DNA of 64,000 nt from the NCBI GenBank assembly GCA_964106915.2, contig OZ066918.1; one strand, 5' to 3'. The position numbers and the translations under genes were made by a program. Position 1 is the first letter of the stretch; every line of letters begins with the position of its first letter. This DNA is from Podarcis gaigeae (lineage: Eukaryota). Positions 2,716 to 63,194 of this stretch are shown piece after piece. Under the pieces are notes generated by a model. It worked only from the letters and a program-made list of their open reading frames with translations, ran no database searches and was not told the origin of the DNA.

Positions 2716-2851
2716 NNNNNNNNNNNNNNNNNNNNNNNNNNNNNNNNNNNNNNNNNNNNNNNNNNNNNNNNNNNNNNNNNNNNNNNNNNNNNNNNNNNNN
2801 NNNNNNNNNNNNNNNNNNNNNNNNNNNNNNNNNNNNNNNNNNNNNNNNNNN
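2716..2851. other. Assembly gap (136 N)
   Basis: Run of N. Confidence 1.
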
Positions 2852-9514: not shown

Positions 9515-10119
9515 CAGTGGTAAAAAAGGTAAAGGTAAAGGTACCCCTGCCCGTACGGGCCAGTCTTGACAGACTCTGGGGTTGTGCGCCCATCTCACTT
9601 AAGAGGCCAGGGGCCAGCGCTGTCTGGAGACACTTCCGGGTCACGTGGCCAGCGTAACAAAGCTGCATCTGGCGAGCCAGAGCTGCACACGGAAACGCCG
9701 TTTACCTTCCCGCTGGTAAGCGGTCCCTATTTATCTACTTGCACCCGGAGGTGCTTTCAAACTGCTAGGTTGGCAGGCACTGGGACCGAGCAGCGGGAGC
9801 GCACCCCGCCGCAGGGATTCGAACCGCCGACCTTTCAATCAGCAAGTCCTAGGCGCTGAGGCTTTAACCCACAGCGCCACCTGCGTCCCACAGTGGTACC
9901 TCGGGTTAAATACGCTTCAGGTTACAGACTCCGCTAACCCAGAAATTGTGCTTCAGGTTAAGAACTTTGCTTCAGGATGAGAACAGAAATCATGCTCCGG
10001 CGGTGCGGCAGCAGCGGGAGGAGGCCCCATTAGCTAAAGTGGTGCTTCAGGTTAAGAACAGTTTCAGGTTAAGAACGGACCTCCGGAATGAATTAAGTAC
10101 TTAACCTGAGGTACCACTG
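9515..10119. mobile_element. Tc1/mariner-type MITE, internal type B, left TIR interrupted by a SINE
   Basis: TA|CAGTGGTA at 9513-9522, body resumes CAGTGGTACCTCGGGTTAA at 9891, ends TTAACCTGAGGTACCACTG|TA at 10119; repeated CTTCAGGTTAAGAAC; closely similar to 15453-15670. Confidence 0.85.
9523..9889 (-). mobile_element. Sauria SINE (tRNA-derived, Bov-B-associated type), full length
   Basis: Reverse complement starts GGGACGCAGGTGGCGCTGTGGGTTAAA with B-box GGTTCGAATCC and ends in (ACCTTT)n; 9-bp TSD ACAGTGGTA at 9514-9522 and 9890-9898. Confidence 0.92.
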
Positions 10120-11487
10120 TACAGGGGGAACTGGAATCCAGTGGAGATCTGCCCCTCCCTGCTGCCCTGCCCCTCATGCTGCTCCAAGGGTCCACCTAAC
10201 CATAAGCGCTGCAGGGAGAAGGGGACAGAAGCAAAAACTTCCACTGGAAGCAGCATCCTGTTAGTGGAACTTTGCCCACAGACACTTGCAGCAGCAGAAC
10301 CTTAGTTATGATGTGACCCACAGTGTGTTAGGGGCAATGTCTTTTGGCAGCACTGTGAGAAGAAACCAATTCTAATTGCAACTTTAGTATTTGAATTTCC
10401 AGTTTGACACTCCCACTTAGAATTGAATAGTCCAGGGGAGTTCCATGGCATTTGGGCACAATTATCTGGGGCTACAAAAGCTATTCAAAGTGTGTGGAGT
10501 CATTTTAATAAAGGAAATTTGTGCAACCTGTCTGATTTTTACCAGGAAAACAGAACATTTTTGTGCCTACATTGGCAATTAGGTGATTTTATTTCCACCA
10601 GCAATATGCCGACTTCTATACAAAAATTGCAGTTCCTGCTTCATGGAAAAGCCGAGCAAAAAGTTTCCCTTCCCCCCTTTCAAGACTCATCTCCTCCTGC
10701 TATATACTTATAAAATGTTTGGTATCGAGCCCCAACTCGGAACCCTTTAATGCTGGAAAGCACAGCAAGGGAAGCCTTGGGCAGGGCAGGAGGAAGACAG
10801 AAAATGACATTTTAATTTCTTCCCCACCACCACATACACCTCTGTTAGTCCTGCTGTGCTCCCCATCCTGCTATGGAGGTTCTTATTCCAGGGTGGCTGG
10901 AGTCTTGAACAGGAGTACAACTCTTAGACTGCATTCTGACAGCACTTTACTCTGTTTTCCTGGTGTTTCCTTCCCTGATCATTTACATGCTCATTTACAC
11001 TTCTGGAAATCTAGCATAAGTTTAGCAGTCTGTGTTAATTGCTTCCAGGGAAAAAAAACCAATTTTTCCAATCCCATTAACCCAGGTAAACACAGGAGTT
11101 TTGTGCTGTAATTTTCCTGTAGTTTGCATGGATCACGCCATGTGACAAAATTGGGGTGGAATTCCAGCATACAGTTCTTTTCCTCCATTATCATGGGCGA
11201 ATGACAGGGGAACAGAAACATGCATGTCCGCCATTGTATCACACCACACGCAGCAGTGTGAATGAAATTTAGCAAGACATAGTGTTATATTGATCAAAAA
11301 GCCACAATTCCATAATGATACAGTAAAAGGAATACAGTGTAAAAGGAACTTCAGAAACGGGTGCATTATAATATAGTGCTAGCATTATAACCAGGATGAC
11401 TAACACACTGGTTTTGAAGAATTTAAAATTGTTAGGGGACGGTGATTCTGCAGTGAATTAACTCTTATTCTTTCCTTACCCTCACAG

Positions 11488-15452: not shown

Positions 15453-15670
15453 TAGCGGTACCTCAGGTTACAGACGCTTCAGGTTACAGACTCTGCTAAC
15501 CCAGAAATAGTACCTCGGGTTAAGAGCTTTGCTTCAGGATGAGAACAGAAATTGCGCAGCGGCGGCAGCAGCAGGCCCCACTAGCTAAAGTTGTACTTCA
15601 GGTTAAGAACAGTTTCAGGTTAAGAATGAACCTCCAGAACGAATTAAGTTCTTAAACCGAGGTACCACCG
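15453..15670. mobile_element. Tc1/mariner-type MITE, internal type B
   Basis: TA|tAGcGGTACCTCAGGTTA ... TTAAACCGAGGTACCACcG|TA; internal sequence co-linear with 9891-10119. Confidence 0.85.
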
Positions 15671-15672
15671 TA

Positions 15673-17018: not shown

Positions 17019-17382
17019 GGGACGCAGGTGGCGCTGTGGGTTAAAGCCTCAGTGCCTAGGATTTGCCGATTGAAAGGTCGGCGGTTCGAATCCCTGCGGC
17101 GGGGTGCGCTCCCGCTGCTCGGTCCCAGCGCCTGCCAACCTAGCAGTTCGAAAGCACCTCCGGGTGCAAGTAGATAAATAGGAACCGCTTACCAGCGGGA
17201 AGGTAAACGGCGTTTCCATGTGCGGCTCTGGCTCGCCAGATGCAGCTTTGTCACGCTGGCCACGTGACCCGGAAGTGTCTCCGGACAGCGCTGGCCCCTG
17301 GCCTCTTGAGTGAGATGGGCGCACAACCCCAGAGTCTGTCAAGACTGGCCCGTACGGGCAGGGGTACCTTTACCTTTACCTT
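17019..17382 (+). mobile_element. Sauria SINE, full length
   Basis: GGGACGCAGGTGGCGCTG..(ACCTTT)n; 13-bp TSD TAACTTTGGCACA at 17006-17018 and 17383-17395. Confidence 0.93.
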
Positions 17383-18088
17383 TAACTTTGGCACAATCCC
17401 TGGAACACCATCTGGAGGGAGTAGTAATCTTGTAGGTTTCAACGGTATTATACAGCAGTAGTGTGTCAGAGTAAGTAATCCGTAGGTGGCATAGTTGTGC
17501 GTGTTTGTGTCTTCTAACAACCAGAGATCTTTCTAACACAAAGGATGGTTGGACTTTAACATTAATTGAAGTGAGGAAACTGACCTCGCTTGCAATGGTT
17601 TGCGCACTGTCTTGAAATAGCTTTATTTTCCACAGCTGCTTCTAAAAAAGATGATTAACCTAGAAATATAGTATGCAATGTTTAAAAACAGGGGCAAGAA
17701 ATATCACATGGGAGAGAATATTGATTGTGATAGTCCACTAACTTATTTCATTTGAAATAAGTGATCTCTTTTGCCTTCACACCAAAATATCAAACAAGAA
17801 ATGGCTCACAAAACTTAAGAGACCACATATTGTCCACTTTAGGTTTTTCTGAAAACTGAATTGTATACTATCTTACTTGGACCCCTTTTAAACCCTCCTT
17901 GGTCAGCTGGATACAACACTAGTCATTCTTCTGAATGATAACATTTCATTGCTGTTTCCCATAAATGCCGACTTGCATACATTTGATATTGTAATTTTTT
18001 CTACGGTTAGCCTCAGCTGAAGACTGTCGCAAATTGCTTTTGGGGTTACAAGCGGACCCATGCTCAAAGGAGTGCCAGCTTAATTTAT

Positions 18089-21895: not shown

Positions 21896-22630
21896 GACCT
21901 AGTGTAGAGTTGGGTAAAGTTCATAGCAAGTGCACAGTTAGCTAAAATGCTTTGTGATTCCATGGCTTTGCAAAGACTTAATAACCTGTGGTGGGTGGAT
22001 AAAACAGGACTTCTAGCACTGAATTAACGATGTTGATTTTTTAAGAAGATACTTAGAAAGTGACACTTGCCTTTCTCTTGGGAGCACTGAGGTTTGGAGT
22101 GGAGTTAGGGGAGGTACAATATGATCTAATCATGAAAAAAAACAAATACTGGCAGCTTGGTGCTGCAAACTTGTATTATTTCTAGGAGTGTGAAGATGAT
22201 AGGTCAGTCCATTCCTTCGAGCTGGAGTAGTATTGGTCCCACTCCAGCTTCAGCATTCAGATTCCAGTAATGCAATGTTTAACATAACCATGTGTGTGCT
22301 AAATGGAGCCAGCTGGAGCAAGTTCCTCCAGTGATGCTTTGCTACTCTGGCAGAGAGCTTGATTTTTGTCAATACCATATGTAGGAGATGGGGGAGACCC
22401 CTCCTCAGGGACCCTGTCTCATTTGTTGGCATTGACGGCGCAGGGCGGTGGCGAGGAGCTGATACAGGCATGCTTAGCTAATAGGTACAGGGCCTCACAA
22501 GCAAGACTCCACCTCTGCAATGCTGCCACATTTTAATTGCTGCGAAATCATTTTGAATAGCAATCAGGAAAGAGCAACAGCTGGGGCCAGTTTTGATCTT
22601 AACTGATGTTGCCCTCTCTTTCTTTGCTAG

Positions 22631-22748
22631 AAGAGAAATATGTCACAATACAGTCATACACCAGCCAGGGGAAGGATGAAATCGGGTTTGACAAAGGAGT
22701 CACTGTGGAGGTCATTCAGAAGAACCTGGAAGGATGGTGGTACATAAG
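22631..22748 (+). CDS. SH3PXD2A: SH3PXD2A internal exon, N-terminal part of second SH3 domain
   Basis: tag|AAGAG..ATAAG|gtaaag; 118 nt; (E)[38 protein letters not shown](R). Confidence 0.96.
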
Positions 22749-25318
22749 GTAAAGGTTTAATTAAATCATTCTGGTGTTGGCAGGCCTTTTGCTTACTAGC
22801 CTTGTGAACACAGCATCTCACAAGTTGCTTGTATCTAAGAAAGGACCTCAGCATATTGAAAACAAAAATGCTGGTCAAGTTGTACAAAGCTACTTAAAAT
22901 TATATTGAATATGTAGTTAAAAATAATGAAGTACAATATATAGAAACGGGTGCGGGGAGGAAAAAGGCTTCTGGGGGATATGTGTGTCCTTCAAGTTGGA
23001 AAAAAATCCAAATCTTCTCTCGTGGGTGGTTGTTCTCTTCATTAATGATTGAGGTGAGCAGCTAGGGTCTCCCAGTTTGCAATCCTATGGACATTTTCCT
23101 TTGAGTAAGACCTACTGAGCACTGTGGGACAAGTTGCATGGGATTAATGTCGGCAGGTGTGATGTTTGATAACTTTGGAAAGGTGTTACCGTTGTGTGTG
23201 TGCGTCACTGCAACACAAGTTATATGACAGCAACAGCTCAAATACTTGTTAATATGTGTTGGTCAATGAATGACCTTGTTTTGCTTTTGTGTTTGTTTAT
23301 TTGCAAAAATAGCTGATAGACTATTTTAGAAGAAATGTTTTAGGGGAGTCATGAGGAAGCAGTGGTGTGTTAGGTCTCTGTGGTGCTACACTTTGGCCTG
23401 TAAAGCAGGTATCCCTTTAACCGCTGGGGGCAGGGGGGCAGGGAGCAGTCTAATTTTCTCTTCTGGTGCCCTTAAACGGCTAATTTCAAGCATAAACTGG
23501 ATTTTCTTTTTTTTTTAAAAAAACCTGGCGCAGCTCCAGAAACATTAAATGCCACGTAAGCAGTATGTCTTTGCAGTGCTCAGCATAATAGACTCCTGTT
23601 GCTTGCTGATAGGAGAGGGATGAAAGATGCAATGTGTATAAAGCCATTCAAGTTTAACTGCTGCAGTCAGATAAATATTGGAAGCAAATCCTACTGAATT
23701 TAATGGGGCTCCCTTTCATGTAAGAGGGCAAAGGATTGTCGTAATTGAAAGAATGGTTGGACAAAGGTACAGGTTTCCTAAAAAAGGTGTGGAATTCTGC
23801 TCCTTGTGTGGCTTTATAAACAAGTGTCAAAGGGAGGGTACAAACCTGTGGATCCTGACACATTATAAGGAGTTCTTTTGGGTAACTCTGGTGATCCCAC
23901 CCCACCCTGGGATACTATGAACCTACCCCTTATTGCTCACTTCCTTTTGCATGTGGAACATATATTTTTCATAGGTTGTTATTTGCTTTGTAGTCTGGCC
24001 ATCTTTAAGGCACTGGAGCTATGAATAATGGAACGACACAGAGTTCTATGTGTTCTATAAACATGTTCGCTGTTAACTCTCCCATCAATAACAAATGAAA
24101 GCCGATAGAAGATTTCCAACGTGATGAGCAGGGAATAGCTGGCCCATTGTCAGCTCTGCATTCTTCCCTTTTTAAATCATCCATGGGACTTTAATCCAAA
24201 GCCAAGGGTTCAGGAGCAGAGTGCACAGTTCTTTGCAGAAGGAGGAACAATATCACAAACTCCCCCTGATGTTATTGCTGAACTCCCTTTTTGTTTTTAA
24301 AATATTTTTTTCTGGTCACTGCCAGCCTTCCTTTTATCTTTAGGTCTGCAGGGGCCTAGAATCTCTTGCAGTCTTCAGTATTTTCATTGAAGAGGGAGAC
24401 CAAAGCCTCTAATTTTTAGCAGTGTTTACATTTTGTGCAAATGGGGAAGGCATAAATGAAAGCAGGCTACAGCCCCTGCCCCTGGCTCAGCTTCCCTGCC
24501 TCCTGGTGTTGACTGTTTGGGATTATTTTGTAGTTGGATGAAGGCACCTTGCATGCCAGAGACTCTTCTCATTCTGCACATGCAGAGAAAAGCTATCTTT
24601 GCTGATGCATGCTCACGGAGATTCAGTCTAGGCTGAAGCCAAACTAGAAGGCTAGGAAGCTAGGCTAAAGCCAAACTAGAAGGCTAGGAAAAAGCCTAGG
24701 AAGTATTCATCCTTATGTAGCAGAGGAAGCTTGGGGAGCATCTGGTCCCACCCCTACTGTGCACGGCAAGACTATCTCCGTTGTGCATGTTTAGATGGGA
24801 TCCACTACAATGCTATGGTTAACAGACCTGATTTTCCTAGACAGTGGATAGCTGACCAGAAGCTGCAGACTTCATTGCCAATATATCTACCTAAGGCATG
24901 GCAGCCTTCCATGGAAGAGTGTGGTTTTGGTCCACAATAACAAGAGTCCTTGCATATGAAACAGGGATTTCCTAATTTGCTTTCTCTTCCTCCTCTATGG
25001 GACGCAGGTGGCGCTGTGGGTAAAAGCCTCAGCGCCTAGGGCTTGCCGATCGAAAGGTCGGCGGTTCAAATCCCTGCGGCGGGGTGCGCTCCCGTCGTTC
25101 GGTCCCAGCGCCTGCCAACCTAGCAGTTCGAAAGCACCCCCGGGTGCAAGTAGATAAATAGGGACCGCTTACTAGCGGGAAGGTAAACGGTGTTTCCGTG
25201 TGCGGCTCTGGCTCGCCAGAGCAGCGATGTCACGCTGGCCACGTGACCCGGAAGTGTCTCTGGACAGCATTGGCCCCCGGCCTCTTGAGTGAGATGGGCG
25301 CACAACCCTAGAGTCTGG

Positions 25319-26119
25319 CAGTGGCGTAGCGTGGGTTGTCAGCACCCGGGGCAAGGCAAGTGATTTGCGCCCCCTAACCCGTGGATTTGCCCTAACCCCA
25401 GAAGTTGCGCCCCCCCTGCACCCCCCACGCTACGCCACTGTGGAGTCGTCCGCCATCCTGAGCCAGCGGACCGACCGATCGCTCGCCCGCCCGGAGCCGC
25501 TGCGGCCGGAGAGCTGCGGCCGATCGCGCTGCGCCCTCTGCCCGCCGCCGGCTCTAGGCCAAACCCCGGGCCCGACTCGGGAAGCAAATACCGCGCATGA
25601 GAGGAAAAGACGCGCAAACCCCCGGCGCAGGCAAAGCGCTTGTTGACACGGGAGGGGAGGGGGGGAGAGGAAACGCTGCTGGTGCCGCTGCTCCTCGGCA
25701 GCGGCTCCTCCTCTTAGCCCGCCCTGCTTACATTTGCGCCAATCCCCGCCCACTAAAGCCTTTGCGCCTCCCAATGGGAAGCCTTGCCGGGCGGCGGCCT
25801 CTGCTGCCTGAGAGTTCTAAAGCCACGCCCACTTTCCCAGAGACTGGCTGTTCTGAGGGATCCAGGGCAGGGCCGGCGTGCGCGCGCGCTTCTTGCTGCC
25901 CGGGCGCTTGCTCTAATCCCGCCTTCCCTGGGAGGGAGGGACGGCGGTGGCCGCGAGCGTCCGGGGTGGGGCACGCGCTGGCTCTCCCTGGCGCCCCCGC
26001 GCCTGGCGTTCTATCAGCGCCACCAGGACCAGATAGGGGCAGAGAGCTCCGAGTGCGCCCCCAAAAATGTTGCGCCCGGTGCGGCTGGCACCCCTTGCAC
26101 CCCCCACGCTACGCCACTG
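25319..26119. mobile_element. Composite non-autonomous hAT element with GC-rich cargo
   Basis: 17-bp TIRs CAGTGGCGTAGCGTGGG / CCCACGCTACGCCACTG; exact 8-bp TSD GAGTCTGG at 25311-25318 and 26120-26127; extra internal right TIR ending at 25440. Confidence 0.9.
25441..26050 (-). promoter_or_regulatory. CpG-island promoter/first-exon-like cargo inside the hAT element
   Basis: Very CpG-dense relative to flanks; GC boxes at 25718-25724, 25744-25753, 25823-25830; CCAAT at 25739 and 25771; minus-strand GC-rich leader ending cagg-ATG-G (ATG at 25456-25454). Confidence 0.65.
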
Positions 26120-27975
26120 GAGTCTGGCAAGACTGGCCCGTACGGGCAGGGGTACCTTTACCTTTACCTTACCTCCTCTGTTATGAATCGAGTTGAAGGC
26201 AAGAATGAATGAAAGATAAGATATAGTGCTTAGGCTGGTTCTGAACTGTGATTAAGAATGTCATGCTTGTATCAGCAGCATCAGAACAGCCGATGCAGTC
26301 CACTTGAAAAATGCCCCCATCTAAATCCATAGGATGTAGGTGCATGTTGGTGCACATACTTGGGCTCTCTGACTCTCGGGGGGCCCTAATAATGAAGGCG
26401 ATGGGGAAATGCACTGAAAAGTGTAGGGTGACCGAATGATTAATGGAAAGATTTATAAACAACGCTGCAAGCAAATCAGAATAAATGCTCAAGAAACCAA
26501 AGTGGGACTATTATAGCTATCAGAACTTTTGCCACACAAAAAATGCTTGCAAGAATGCATAATCATAATGACATATGTGTCACAAGCATAAGATAAGCAC
26601 TAATAATTAGGTAATAAGTTCCACGTTAAAGTCTTTAATGTTCACCTCCTTAAATAATAGTTTCCAAAATACATGAATCTGTACTGATTCTTACTTCCCC
26701 CTCCCCTGCTTTTCCCTTCCTGGTTTCCTTCCCTTTGGAGTAATTCCAGTATTCTGGAGCTGGAAAGCAGATGTTAACAGGGAAGAAAACGCTCAGACAA
26801 ATGGAGGCCTCTCCCCCCCCCCTTTTCTCCCACCCCCCAGTGTTGTTACAGTTTGGGTGCTAACGTTTCATTCAGCATTTAAAAAACTTTTTTGGAATTG
26901 CAGTGTAGCTGCTTCTATATATTACCACCTTCTTGTTGCATTCCACTCTCCAGTGCATCCGAATGTTGTCCTCCCTCCCCTGCTCCATTTTCCTTTACAG
27001 TATTATGAATGTTGAGAAGGTTCACAAGTGGTTACTGTTCTAACCCTAAACTCTTAAATTGAACTGTTGTCTTCCACAGCTATGGGAAACTGTGCAAGCA
27101 AATAGCCTGTCAGATAATGTGCTTAATGCAGGGACGCCAACTCATGGGGGACGAGAATTAGGGGGCGTCTGCTTCTCCTGCTGCTGCTGTGCAAGGGAAG
27201 AAGGTTCGAAGCACATACACACACACCCAGCTAGTGGTGGCAGGAGGAGGAGGAGGAGTGGCCTGCCATTGAAGCTGCTTGCTAGAGGGGCAAAAGGGGA
27301 AGGAAGAAAATTTCAGAAGAGTAGGTTATATTTCTGCAACTAAGCCCATGGCATTTGTAACTCCATCTGGTTTTAAGTCCTTGTGAGCTTTGATTCAAAG
27401 TAAACTTTATTATTGGGTTAGCTCCCCCAATGCTGGGGGTGCTTCCAGATGGGCATCAGTGTTCCCTTTGCATGCTTTCCCCCCCTCTTTCAATGTCCAC
27501 GTGGAATTGTTGGCATAAAAGTGCCACCCCCACCCCCCATTTTTCCCTTTCCAGGAAATATCTCCAAGTCTAAAAACCCCATCTCTACCTACCCATTTAG
27601 TGATATCTCAATGACCTCTTTGCAATGACTATCTGGCTATCTGGAAGCATCCAGGATCCAGTGACTATTGGGTTTTGTATTTCCAAAGTAGGATTCCTGG
27701 AGCACACTTACCAGTTGCTAGGCAGCTAGGGCTGATGGGATTTGGAGTTTAACCATAGCTAGAGGACCACAGGCTTATCATCTCTGCTTCATTTCAGTAT
27801 TGCAGCACTGACCGGCAACTGTGTGGTTATAGTCACTTTCCATTAGTAGGGTTTTTTTGCATGCATTTTAAGGTGTGCATGGGGATTCTAATTCTATTCC
27901 TGTACATCATCCTGCAACACCATGTCAGATTTTGAGGCACAGAAAACTGAATATATTTGCGTTTTCTATTTCTAG

Positions 27976-28310
27976 GTATTTAGGCAAAGAGGGCTGGGCC
28001 CCAGCCTCGTACCTGAAAAAAGCAAAAGATGACCTTCCATCAAGGAAAAAGAACTTGACGGGGCCAGTGGAAATTATAGGAAACATCATGGAGATCAGCA
28101 ACCTGTTGAATAAGAAATCCTCTAGTGACAAGGAAACCCAGTCAGAAATTGAAACAGCAGAATCCCACATCACCAAGAAGGAGATAAGCTTGCCCATCTT
28201 ATGCAATGATTCTAATGGCAATGCCATGATGACTCAAGACAAACAGATTTCAAAATTGGCACAGGGTTCTCCAGCCATAGCACGGATTGCGCCACAAAGA
28301 GCTCAAATAA
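27976..28310 (+). CDS. SH3PXD2A: SH3PXD2A internal exon, end of second SH3 domain plus linker
   Basis: tag|GTATT..AATAA|gtaag; 335 nt; (R)YLGKEGWAPASYLKKAKDDLP..GPVEIIGNIMEISNLLNKK..IARIAPQRAQI; phases fit neighbouring exons. Confidence 0.96.
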
Positions 28311-29961
28311 GTAAGGCCATAGTAGACTCCTAGCTACTTATTTACTGCTGGGGCAGGTTGGAAGGGTCAACAACTTCTGATGGATTGAGGAAAATACTAG
28401 TTGAGAGCAGCTTCCTCAGCCCGGTTCTTCAGATGTTTAGGGGACTACATCTCCCATCAGCCCCAGCCAGCATGGCCCAGTGATCAAGGGTGATGGGTGG
28501 TGCTTTTGCCTTGGGCCCTCAAAAGTTGTTGGACTCCAACTCCCAGCATCCACGGTCATCTTGCCAAATGGTCAGGGATGATGGGAAATGTCATCCAACA
28601 ACATATGGGGACCCCAGCTCATTCTTAAATATAGAAAATGGGTGAATTTAAAGTTATATGATTATACCAATTAAGCCATTAAAAACTATGATTGAAACGA
28701 GAGGTTTGTGAAAATGGAGTTGGCACCAGAAATATACAGAGGAGGGAGGATAGATGAATGCATATGATAGCAAGTCTTGCAGGGCAGAGTGGAATATTAA
28801 TAAGGAGTGCAGGCTACACCTGGCTAGGCCCCTTGGCTGATGTTTGTCTGCAAAAAGTCTGACAACCACCAGTCTGTGATTGATTGCTATGATCCTGAAT
28901 GTGACATGATTCCTGCATAGACTCATCTTTTGGGAAGACATCTGATGCCCCCTTCTGGTGAATTGCTCCTAAAAGTCTAGATTTCTATACAGTATTAGCA
29001 CAAGGGTTTTTCAGTTGTTCACATCTAGAGTGATTGAACAGACATAAAGAGGGGGCATGGAATCATGGCAGCAAGCTCTGCTTCAGTACAGTCACTTGAA
29101 GGTCAGAACAGAGCCCACAGAAGTATAATCCTGTCAGGGTTCCAAAAGCCATGGAGAGAGTCATCTGTATTTACAGCTCTGTTTTCATAGGCTCCATACA
29201 GTTCTTACTTGAAGGTGTGCAGAATGGAGACAGGGACCATATGGTCATCTTGTTCCCCTCTCTGCATGCAAAGATCACATGAAAGGAGCTCCATTGTTGT
29301 GAATAGCCATGCCATGTTTCTGGGCATCATAGAAAACAAGACAAAATTCCCATACTATGTTGGCTTAACTCCAAAAACCCACTGGTTTTATTTTGACTTC
29401 TTTGCACCTTGCCCCCACCATCAGTTCCATCCAACATAATTTGGCAAGATTAAAAGAATCATCTGTTTTAATTATTACTCTCCCGTGTCTCAGATAAAGC
29501 AGATCAGTTCTGGCTTCAGCACATAGTAACCCTTTTGGGGTGGGGGCAGGTGAAGACCTTTTCATTTGTCTAGACCTCTTAGAGCTTGTAGACAGGCCTT
29601 TGCCAACCTGGTGCCCTCCAGTTGTTTTGGACCCCAACTCCCATCAGCCCCAGCCAGCACAGGTTGTAATCTAAAACATCTGGCGCTTGTGGGAGTCTTG
29701 GAGAGTTGTCAGTCCTGTTTTTATGCTGACTTTGCTGCTCTGTTGGTTTTCATAAGTATGTTATTTGTATTTTGTTTAAAAACATAAGGTGCCCAGGAAG
29801 GCTTTGCGCCTTAAAAATTGTTATTAAATTATTGTAACAAATAAATTATTTTATTTTTCTTGGACACGTTAATTTTTATTTTAATTGCTGGCAGAACATT
29901 GAAGCTTGGATGTGCATGTGCCTGTTCTGGTTAAATATGGAATATTTTTTTCTTTCACTAG

Positions 29962-54552: not shown

Positions 54553-54794
54553 CTAGGTGCTGCGATAGGTCTTGATGATGTCCTTGATGGCACGTCTGCA
54601 GATAGGACAACAGGCATTGGCCATCTTCTTGAGTTTGAGCCCGCAGGTGTAGCACAGACACATATGTCCACAGGAGTAAATCACAGTATCCACCATGTTC
54701 TCATAGCAGATGGTGCACTCGTCATTCCAGGACCCTGAGATGGAAGGGGAAAGGGGGGACTCTGGCATGCTGACGGGAGAGTTTGGAGCTGTAC
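54553..54794 (-). CDS. NEURL1: NEURL1 (neuralized E3 ubiquitin ligase 1) terminal coding exon, RING finger
   Basis: Minus: ttgcag|GTACAGCT..; (G)[74 protein letters not shown]; C3HC4 RING; known tail-to-tail synteny with SH3PXD2A. Confidence 0.96.
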
Positions 54795-56559: not shown

Positions 56560-56607
56560 CTGCAGAAGGAAGTGAAATGCTGGTATAGTTTCAGTTTTTT
56601 ACTGAGA

Positions 56608-56910
56608 GGTAGTGTGACATTGTGATCAGAGAGGCCCAGGTTCAAATCCCTGCCACAACAACAGTGGCGTAGCGTGGGTTGTCAGCACCCGGGGCAAGGC
56701 AAGTAATTTGCACCCCCTAACCCATGGATTTGCGCCCCTTAACCCTAACCCCCAGATTTTGCGCCCGGTGCGGCCGGCCCCCCCGCACCCCCCACGCTAC
56801 GCCACCGCACAACAACTCACTGGTTGTTTCTGGAGCAGTCACTCTCTCTCCCAGCCTATCCTATCTCACAGGGTTATTATTAGGAGAAAGTGGGAGAAAG
56901 AGAACCATCT
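56608..56910 (+). mobile_element. Old tRNA-derived SINE remnant (MIR/Squam3-like) hosting a hAT MITE
   Basis: B-box-like ccaggttcaaatccc at ~56637-56650; continues after the insert with ctcactgg..cagtcactctctctcccagccta..ctcacagggtt. Confidence 0.55.
56662..56807. mobile_element. Short hAT MITE (146 bp), same family as 25319-26119
   Basis: CAGTGGCGTAGCGTGGG ... CCCACGCTACGCCACcG; exact 8-bp TSD CACAACAA at 56654-56661 and 56808-56815. Confidence 0.92.
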
Positions 56911-61818: not shown

Positions 61819-62179
61819 GGGAAGCAGGTGGCGCTGTGGGTTAAAGCCTCAGCGCCTAGGACTTGCCGATCGAAAGGTCAGCGGTTCGAATCCCTGCGGC
61901 GGGGTGCGCTCCCGCTGCTCGGTCCCAGCGCCTGCCAACCTAGCAGTTCGAAAGCACCTCCAGGTGCAAGTAGATAAATAGGGACCACTTACCAGCGGGA
62001 AGGTAAACGGCGTTTCCGTGTGCGGCTCTGGCTCGCCAGAGCTGTGATGTCACGCTGGCCACGTGACCCGGAAGTGTCTTCGGACAGCGCTGGCCCCTGG
62101 CTTCTTGAGTGAGATGGGCGCACAACCCCAGAGTCTGTCAAGACTGGCCCGTATGGGCAGGGGTACCTTTACCTTTACC
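61819..62179 (+). mobile_element. Sauria SINE, full length
   Basis: GGGAAGCAGGTGGCGCTG..(ACCTTT)n; 15-bp TSD TTTAAATGGCCATTC at 61804-61818 and 62180-62194. Confidence 0.93.
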
Positions 62180-63194
62180 TTTAAATGGCCATTCTCCTTC
62201 ACTGCTGTTGTGGCAACAGCCTCTAATGTCTAGGCATCAACACTTGCAGCAAACGTCAGCTCATACTCATTTCGCTTTCTTGGCTTTATGGGTTGCAGAC
62301 AGATATGTACAAATGTCTGCCTGAATAGCATTTCCTGCCAGACTCACTCAACTTGGACATTTTTGCCTACAGACAATATTCAACTAAATCAAAGTGCTAG
62401 TGCACAGATTAGCTCAAGCACAATGGGACTTCCCTTTCTTCTCACCCCACATACACCTTATGCAATCCATGAATCTCCTCTTGAGGTTGAGAGAGTCCCC
62501 AGAACAGATAAAGGGGGGCATGGGAGGAGTAGAGGGGGGTGACATTCTGTTGTGCAAGAAGAAATCCTTGCACTAATAGAACATCCACCTTAGGTCAAAA
62601 CAAACCCAAGGAGGTTAAGATAGCCAGTAGATCAGGATAGACTAGCACTTTGCTCAGAGTTATTTTACTCCCACTAATTCACTAACAGCACATCAAAAAG
62701 TTTGCTGCTTTAAAAATTACTGCAGATTTTGCTGGATGCATCAACTTGGTTGTTACCAGGAAATTTAGTTCATTTTGTCACTTGCACGTATGCAGAAAAA
62801 TCTAACCCATTCCAGCATTTGTGCAAGAAATGGGGAAGCTTTGGCTGCCATGAACAGGCACATCAAAATTCAGAGAGGATGATAAACTATCTTGTTTCCA
62901 ATTTATTCAATATACCCAGGCAAAGGCATAAGGAGCTAATATATAATTATTACTAACATCCCATTTCAGCCAGAGCTGTTTTATTATTCTGATGAAGAAG
63001 ATGATTAATTTGCAGTCTCACAGAAGGAGAGAACATAAAGTTTATGCCTGGTGTGTAAGTCCCTTGACTATAACTTCATATCATTTTTGTTTGTCAAACT
63101 CAATCTGTTAATTTTCTCTTCATTTCTAATTTTTTCAACCTTAAGTTCAGTTCTTAACATTACCACATAAGTGGAATATATACTTTTTAAATAC

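What the first reader, a model, noticed from the sequence alone, without database searches (positions are those of the whole stretch)
25319..26119. Composite hAT transposon with three TIRs carrying a promoter/first-exon-like cargo (Pack-hAT candidate)
Seen: 801 bp bounded by perfect 17-bp TIRs and an exact 8-bp TSD (GAGTCTGG), so it moved as one unit. It consists of a complete 122-bp MITE (25319-25440, with its own right TIR), ~600 bp of CpG-dense non-MITE DNA, and a second right end (~26055-26119). The plain 146-bp family member at 56662-56807 lacks the cargo. The inner MITE has no matching TSD (left GAGTCTGG, right TGGAGTCG). On the minus strand the cargo reads promoter motifs, then a GC-rich leader, then cagg-ATG-GCG-GAC-GAC-TCC-A (MADDS), cut exactly at the inner TIR. 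Known: 8-bp TSDs mark hAT elements, and gene-fragment capture by TIR elements is well known in plants (Pack-MULEs) but sparsely described in vertebrates. Inference: a lizard hAT MITE family captures and disperses the 5' end of a host gene, skipping an internal end during excision. Alternative: the cargo is the promoter and start of the parental autonomous element's transposase. I cannot identify the donor gene.
Basis: partly seen in the sequence, partly recalled or inferred. Interest (0 to 1): 0.85.

Follow-up and report, generated by a model that had tools for sequence, protein, structure and literature searches.

The report
Three-ended lizard transposon carrying promoter-like DNA
In a wall lizard, a small cut-and-paste transposon joined to the end of a second one has jumped as one piece into an intron of the SH3PXD2A gene, carrying about 600 bases that look like the promoter and start codon of another, still unidentified gene, a kind of gene-fragment capture well known in plants but hardly surveyed in reptiles.

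Summary
Observation confirmed: three perfect 17-bp TIRs and one exact 8-bp TSD around an 801-bp unit. It sits inside a young SINE in an SH3PXD2A intron of a Podarcis lizard. Sister SINEs show the empty target, and the orthologous skink and horned-lizard introns lack the cargo, so the cargo came from elsewhere. The outer right end is not a re-copy of the inner one, and the inner one lacks a 13-bp subterminal block. Best reading (0.7): a MITE landed in a host-type CpG-island 5' end already joined to another family member's right end, and the outer ends moved together, like maize Ac-cargo-fAc composite insertions. Host origin is therefore inferred, and an autonomous element's own promoter remains a rival (0.15). 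Pack-hATs are known in animals, but lizards were effectively unsurveyed. The scan noted similar Pack-hATs elsewhere in this genome (PKD2, ATP1B3, CENPW; unchecked by me). New variant of a known kind; interest 0.55.

The parts
25311..25318 (.). left 8-bp target-site duplication
   Evidence: single copy of this target in three sister SINEs
25319..25440 (+). complete inner MITE, 122 bp, left TIR 25319-25335 and inner right TIR 25424-25440; 115 of 122 aligned bases match the sibling MITE, with deletions of about 10 and 13 bp
25424..25440 (-). internal right TIR, bypassed; its subterminal region lacks the 13-bp block present at 26076-26088 and 56765-56777
25441..26056 (-). cargo, about 616 bp: CpG-island-like, four GC boxes, two CCAAT, NRF1-like site, GC-rich leader, ATG at 25456; no splice donor; no match in the orthologous introns of two other lizards
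25441..25456 (-). putative first 16 coding bases, cut cleanly at the inner TIR; the frame stops inside the TIR (8-residue ORF)
26057..26119 (+). solo outer right end, about 63 bp, with intact subterminal block and TIR 26103-26119; differs from the inner right end at several positions
26120..26127 (.). right 8-bp target-site duplication
24999..25318 (+). 5' part of the host SINE (Sauria/Squam1 type by my recall) into which the unit inserted; SINE's own left TSD at 24989-24996
26120..26170 (+). 3' tail of the same host SINE; SINE's own right TSD at 26172-26179
56662..56807 (+). cargo-free sibling MITE, 146 bp, own 8-bp TSD, one mismatch in the right TIR, in a NEURL1 intron
22750..27960 (+). SH3PXD2A intron that hosts the unit (approximate limits from tblastn); the cargo faces antisense to the host gene

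Best explanation
A non-autonomous hAT composite built from two different family members. Step 1 (inferred): a family right end became joined to a CpG-island 5' end of host type; this junction near 26056 falls inside the element and is a deletion or repair junction. Step 2 (inferred from the clean cut at the inner TIR): a 122-bp MITE inserted 16 nt after the start codon, either in the native gene or, slightly more likely because it would be harmless there, in an earlier Pack-hAT copy of that 5' end. Step 3 (shown by the single TSD): transposase paired the MITE's left end with the distant intact right end, passing over the MITE's own right end, which lacks a subterminal block, and pasted the 801-bp unit into a young SINE in an SH3PXD2A intron. 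The result is an orphan CpG-island promoter-like segment facing antisense to SH3PXD2A, without coding potential; whether it is transcribed is untested.
For: One exact 8-bp TSD around the whole unit, none around the inner MITE. Empty target visible in three sister SINEs, and the host SINE's private last base is present in both TSD copies. Skink intron is 1191 bp shorter between anchors, about SINE + unit + TSD, and neither skink nor horned lizard matches the cargo. Outer right end matches the MITE for about 63 bp and differs from the inner one. The 13-bp block missing from the inner end is present in both other lizard right ends, and the invertebrate MITE ends carry similar sequence at that position in a loose alignment. 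Same anatomy as maize whole-Ac + host DNA + fAc composite insertions with one 8-bp TSD and the neighbouring-element model for Pack elements. Cargo has vertebrate housekeeping-promoter anatomy (my knowledge).
Against: No donor locus, no second copy of the cargo and no transposase were found. Young SINEs in the window have CpG obs/exp 0.76-0.83, so CpG richness alone does not prove host origin. Motif enrichments are weak. The five-residue start could not be assigned to a gene. The 13-bp deletion may have happened after the composite formed, or may mark a shorter subfamily that is mobile by itself.
Confidence: 0.7

Rival explanations
1. The cargo is the promoter and first codons of the family's own autonomous element (possibly itself using a promoter taken from the host); a MITE inserted into the transposase gene and the 5' part then moved as a three-ended derivative.
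For: The cargo reads inward from a terminal end towards an ATG about 660 bp in, as a transposase gene would. Unchecked scan notes mention a near-intact autonomous hAT and a hAT transposase behind a CpG-island promoter in this genome.
Against: The outer end keeps only about 63 bp of family sequence. A 70% GC island with CCAAT/GC boxes and a long GC-rich leader is typical of host genes (my knowledge). Other unchecked notes name real host exons as cargo of hAT elements in this genome.
Confidence: 0.15
2. One MITE, template switching: a replication fork or gap-repair strand copied the MITE, switched to a host promoter and switched back, re-copying the right end (FoSTeST or gap filling, Tan et al. 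2021), then transposed.
For: This is the published model for multicopy animal Pack-TIRs. A 5-base stretch is shared between the inner junction and the TSD, offset by two bases.
Against: The two right ends differ by a 13-bp deletion and several substitutions and indels, while TIRs and TSD are perfect; a re-copied end should be near-identical. The inner junction falls exactly at the TIR tip.
Confidence: 0.07
3. The cargo is neither a gene promoter nor host DNA, only the GC-rich interior of a longer non-autonomous hAT family; the ATG is chance.
For: One Kozak ATG in 610 bp is what shuffles give (1 vs 1.35); young repeats here are CpG-rich; orphan hAT families with unrelated interiors exist in Anolis.
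Against: No palindromic or tandem structure in the cargo beyond short chance matches; all four GC boxes lie on one strand, three of them clustered with the two CCAAT boxes upstream of the leader.
Confidence: 0.06
4. Assembly artefact.
Against: A perfect TSD that duplicates a private SINE base, nested inside an intact SINE with its own TSD, is not what mis-assembly makes.
Confidence: 0.02

Closest known systems
Maize Ac/fAc composite insertions and macrotransposons (Zhang 2014 PMC4270019; Su 2020 bioRxiv 10.1101/2020.08.10.245175; PMC9910405)
   Same: hAT superfamily; whole element + captured host DNA + a solo 3' end; one 8-bp TSD; internal repair junction; carries regulatory DNA.
   Different: Those are 10-28 kb, recovered in selected maize alleles, with an autonomous Ac inside; this is 0.8 kb, natural, non-autonomous, in a vertebrate, and its donor is unknown.
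Animal Pack-TIRs, especially multicopy frog Pack-hAT-N8_XT with CAPSL 5' UTR (Tan 2021, PMC8277862)
   Same: Non-TE-like DNA between hAT ends, moved with a TSD; multicopy ones favour GC-rich cargo.
   Different: Published cases are two-ended with TIR-free parents; the pipeline says it may miss end-bypass cases; only 4 of 370 are multicopy; the lizard row has 0 Pack-TIRs and 0 annotated hATs. Here there are three ends and parent and copy number are untested.
Plant Pack-TYPE elements formed from neighbouring insertions (Catoni 2019 PMC6379663; Gisby 2022 PMC8903248, includes maize Pack-hAT)
   Same: Outer ends of two elements mobilise the DNA between them after deletion or mutation of internal ends; here one internal end is gone and the other is damaged.
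   Different: Plant CACTA/PIF/hAT; cargo defined by coding matches; here the cargo is mostly promoter and leader.
Anolis hobo_AC elements (Novick 2010, PMC3014272)
   Same: Lizard hATs that take up genomic DNA and recombine between elements.
   Different: Different TIR (no listed Anolis TIR matches); cargo there is old TE debris, not promoters or first exons.

Membership tests
hAT superfamily (non-autonomous) | 8-bp TSD | tested here: met
   sibling MITE and related invertebrate MITEs also 8 bp
hAT superfamily (non-autonomous) | short TIRs (10-25 bp) | tested here: met
   17 bp; range from PMC3942097
hAT superfamily (non-autonomous) | partner transposase with hAT DDE and dimerisation domains (fixes Ac/Buster/Tip subgroup) | tested here: inconclusive
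   no transposase remnant in long ORFs of the window or via motif scans; Tip-group assignment is recall only
Pack-TIR / Pack-TYPE | internal non-TE sequence between ends of one family | tested here: met
   cargo absent from the sibling MITE and from orthologous introns; non-TE status only against this window, no repeat library
Pack-TIR / Pack-TYPE | identifiable TE-free parental host locus | not testable with these tools
Pack-TIR / Pack-TYPE | transposed after capture (TSD around the whole unit) | tested here: met
Pack-TIR / Pack-TYPE | multiple copies with distinct TSDs | not testable with these tools
   one copy in 64 kb
Macrotransposon / composite insertion | outer ends from two separate elements | tested here: met
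   inner and outer right ends differ
Macrotransposon / composite insertion | donor site with both elements flanking the captured DNA | not testable with these tools
   donor unknown
Internal-deletion derivative of an autonomous hAT | interior homologous to the autonomous parent upstream of the transposase | not testable with these tools
   no autonomous copy could be fetched

The most novel reading that the evidence does not exclude
Podarcis has a young hAT family that captures CpG-island promoters and first exons by pairing ends of neighbouring copies, at a scale like rice Pack-MULEs. If the roughly seven scan notes of such elements in about 8-12 Mb are real and representative, that extrapolates to several hundred to about a thousand per genome (genome size about 1.5 Gb from memory), against a median of 4 Pack-TIRs per animal genome published. 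This unit would be an intermediate that still shows its discarded internal end.
Probability: 0.35. Interest if true: 0.8.

Novelty: new variant of a known kind. Interest (0 to 1): 0.55.

Why it matters
Animal TIR elements are thought to capture host DNA rarely and mostly by passive gap filling into dead elements; capture followed by transposition was seen in four reference-genome cases, and lizards were a blind spot. A three-ended unit keeps the record of how capture by end pairing happens, so far traced mainly in maize and Arabidopsis. If the cargo is a host promoter, such units scatter orphan CpG islands and possible antisense start sites into introns, in a genus with several related genomes where presence and absence can be scored.

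Tried and rejected
So donor, copy number, read support and expression are untested. Orthologous Podarcis site: SH3PXD2A spans 245 kb in P. raffonei and NEURL1 231 kb in a gecko, so no DNA was returned; short isoforms are not on record; no Podarcis NEURL1 id surfaced. TIR hits in viral and bacterial collections are unpaired chance matches. Three degenerate hAT-transposase motif scans gave nothing. Pfam on 54 long ORFs outside the unit: no hit. TIR 12-mer in the literature: no paper. Rejected: cargo native to this intron; chance TSD; a 10-bp TSD reading (breaks TIR symmetry; sibling TSD is 8 bp); second insertion into the MITE's right TSD (junction does not repeat the TSD). I could not name a gene from the five-residue start and do not guess one.

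Full report
Observation. The anatomy is as described. The 17-bp TIR occurs perfectly at 25319, 25424-25440 and 26103-26119, and at both ends of a 146-bp sibling at 56662-56807 (one mismatch); shuffles give none. The 801-bp unit is flanked by an exact 8-bp duplication, the inner 122-bp MITE is not, and the sibling has its own 8-bp duplication. A generic scan for perfect 11-bp TIR pairs with 8-bp TSDs returns only this unit.

Setting. The window is from a wall lizard: the long last exon of SH3PXD2A is 99% identical to Podarcis muralis. The unit lies in the intron between the exons near 22630-22749 and 27950-28312; NEURL1 ends on the other strand near 54556. The unit interrupts a young SINE with three intact sisters in the window. 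The sisters carry the target once; the host SINE has a private base at the last target position and both duplicated copies carry it, which is direct evidence of a true insertion after the SINE arrived. The SINE keeps its own duplication at 24989-24996 and 26172-26179 and differs from its sisters' consensus at 16 of 309 positions (sisters 7-11), so the unit is young. In a skink the same intron is 1191 bp shorter between flanking anchors (2197 versus 1006), close to SINE plus unit plus TSD, and neither skink nor horned lizard matches the cargo. The cargo is therefore foreign to this locus.

The ends. The inner MITE matches the sibling at 115 of 122 aligned bases but has two deletions, about 10 bp in a short internal repeat and 13 bp just inside the right TIR. 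The outer right end matches the sibling over about 63 bp (26057-26119), keeps that 13-bp block (26076-26088) and differs from the inner end at several other positions. So the two right ends come from different copies; the outer one is not a re-copy of the inner one. The same end type turned up in eukaryotic contigs of marine metagenomes, which I read as invertebrate host DNA: 158-161-bp MITEs with up to 31 of 33 terminal bases identical and 8-bp TSDs. Their right ends have similar sequence where the inner lizard end has its deletion, though that alignment is loose. I infer that the block helps transposase binding and that its loss favoured use of the outer end; the order of events is not shown. 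Superfamily assignment rests on TSD and TIR length; no transposase was found.

The cargo. About 616 bp, GC 0.70, CpG obs/exp 0.88, rising to 1.02 in the leader part. On the minus strand it has four GC boxes (1.2 expected, P about 0.04), two CCAAT boxes, an NRF1-like site and an ATG at 25456 in strong context overlapping a YY1-like site; only the GC boxes exceed shuffles. There are two short upstream ORFs, no splice donor, and the main frame stops after eight codons inside the TIR; the first downstream AATAAA on that strand is at 23301. This looks like a vertebrate housekeeping 5' end (my knowledge), but young SINEs here are nearly as CpG-rich (0.76-0.83), so host origin is an inference. The donor gene is not identified.

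Mechanism. Shown: one transposition of the whole unit; two distinct right ends; a junction exactly at a TIR tip on one side of the cargo and inside an element on the other. Inferred: the tip junction is a MITE insertion 16 nt after the ATG, the other is a deletion or repair junction, and transposase paired the outermost ends. This can have happened at the native gene, through two neighbouring insertions or reversed-ends re-replication as in maize, or in an earlier Pack-hAT copy of the same 5' end, where a MITE insertion would cost nothing; I lean slightly to the latter. Together 0.7. Rivals: the autonomous element's own promoter 0.15; template switching on one MITE 0.07; featureless TE interior 0.06; artefact 0.02.

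Comparison. It works like maize Ac + host DNA + fAc composite insertions, which have the same three ends and one 8-bp TSD, and fits the neighbouring-element model for plant Pack elements. In animals, 370 Pack-TIRs are catalogued, 208 of them hAT, only four multicopy, one a frog hAT with a 5' UTR; that pipeline states it may miss end-bypass cases and its lizard row has no Pack-TIR and no annotated hAT. Anolis hobo elements take up genomic DNA but have other TIRs and TE-debris cargo. A search for 'Pack-TIR' found three papers, none on reptiles. Membership in Pack-TIRs is likely but the defining parental-locus test is open.

Earlier scan notes (leads only, not checked by me): other hAT elements in this genome are said to carry PKD2, ATP1B3 and CENPW 5' ends or unnamed CpG islands; a follow-up on the PKD2 case reports many copies and one end derived from a small transposon already in the donor intron. 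Two notes on autonomous hATs keep rival 1 alive. I could not see whether any of these share this TIR.

Verdict. A real, young, three-ended hAT composite carrying foreign promoter-like DNA; a new variant of a known kind. Interest 0.55; 0.8 if the genome-wide, promoter-biased Pack-hAT system holds (probability 0.35).

Noticed in passing
L005:1898-2055, L006:511-671, L007/L008: MITEs of 158-161 bp in eukaryotic metagenome contigs (invertebrate-like, IQSEC-type exon nearby) share up to 31 of the first 33 bases with the lizard left end and have 8-bp TSDs; a widespread or horizontally moved hAT end type.
   Followed up: partly
window 56600-56900: The sibling MITE also sits inside what looks like an older tRNA-derived SINE (recall only), in a NEURL1 intron; its right TIR has one substitution at the second base.
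   Followed up: no
window 56708-56760 and 25365-25405: The MITE interior has a roughly 22-bp repeat unit containing a telomere-like CCCTAA motif; probably the variable-repeat MITE family noted elsewhere in this scan.
   Followed up: partly
window 25441-25448 versus 25311-25318: Five bases just outside the inner TIR equal the first five of the TSD, offset by two; probably chance, unexplained.
   Followed up: partly
window 9525-9889, 17019-17385, 24999-26170, 61819-62184: Four young SINE copies, 92-97% alike, CpG obs/exp about 0.8; they are the only other CpG-rich spots in the window.
   Followed up: partly
window 9892-10121 and 15454-15672: A 230-bp direct repeat pair at 85% identity, unclassified.
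   Followed up: no
window 2716-2851: A 136-base N run; left untouched.
   Followed up: no
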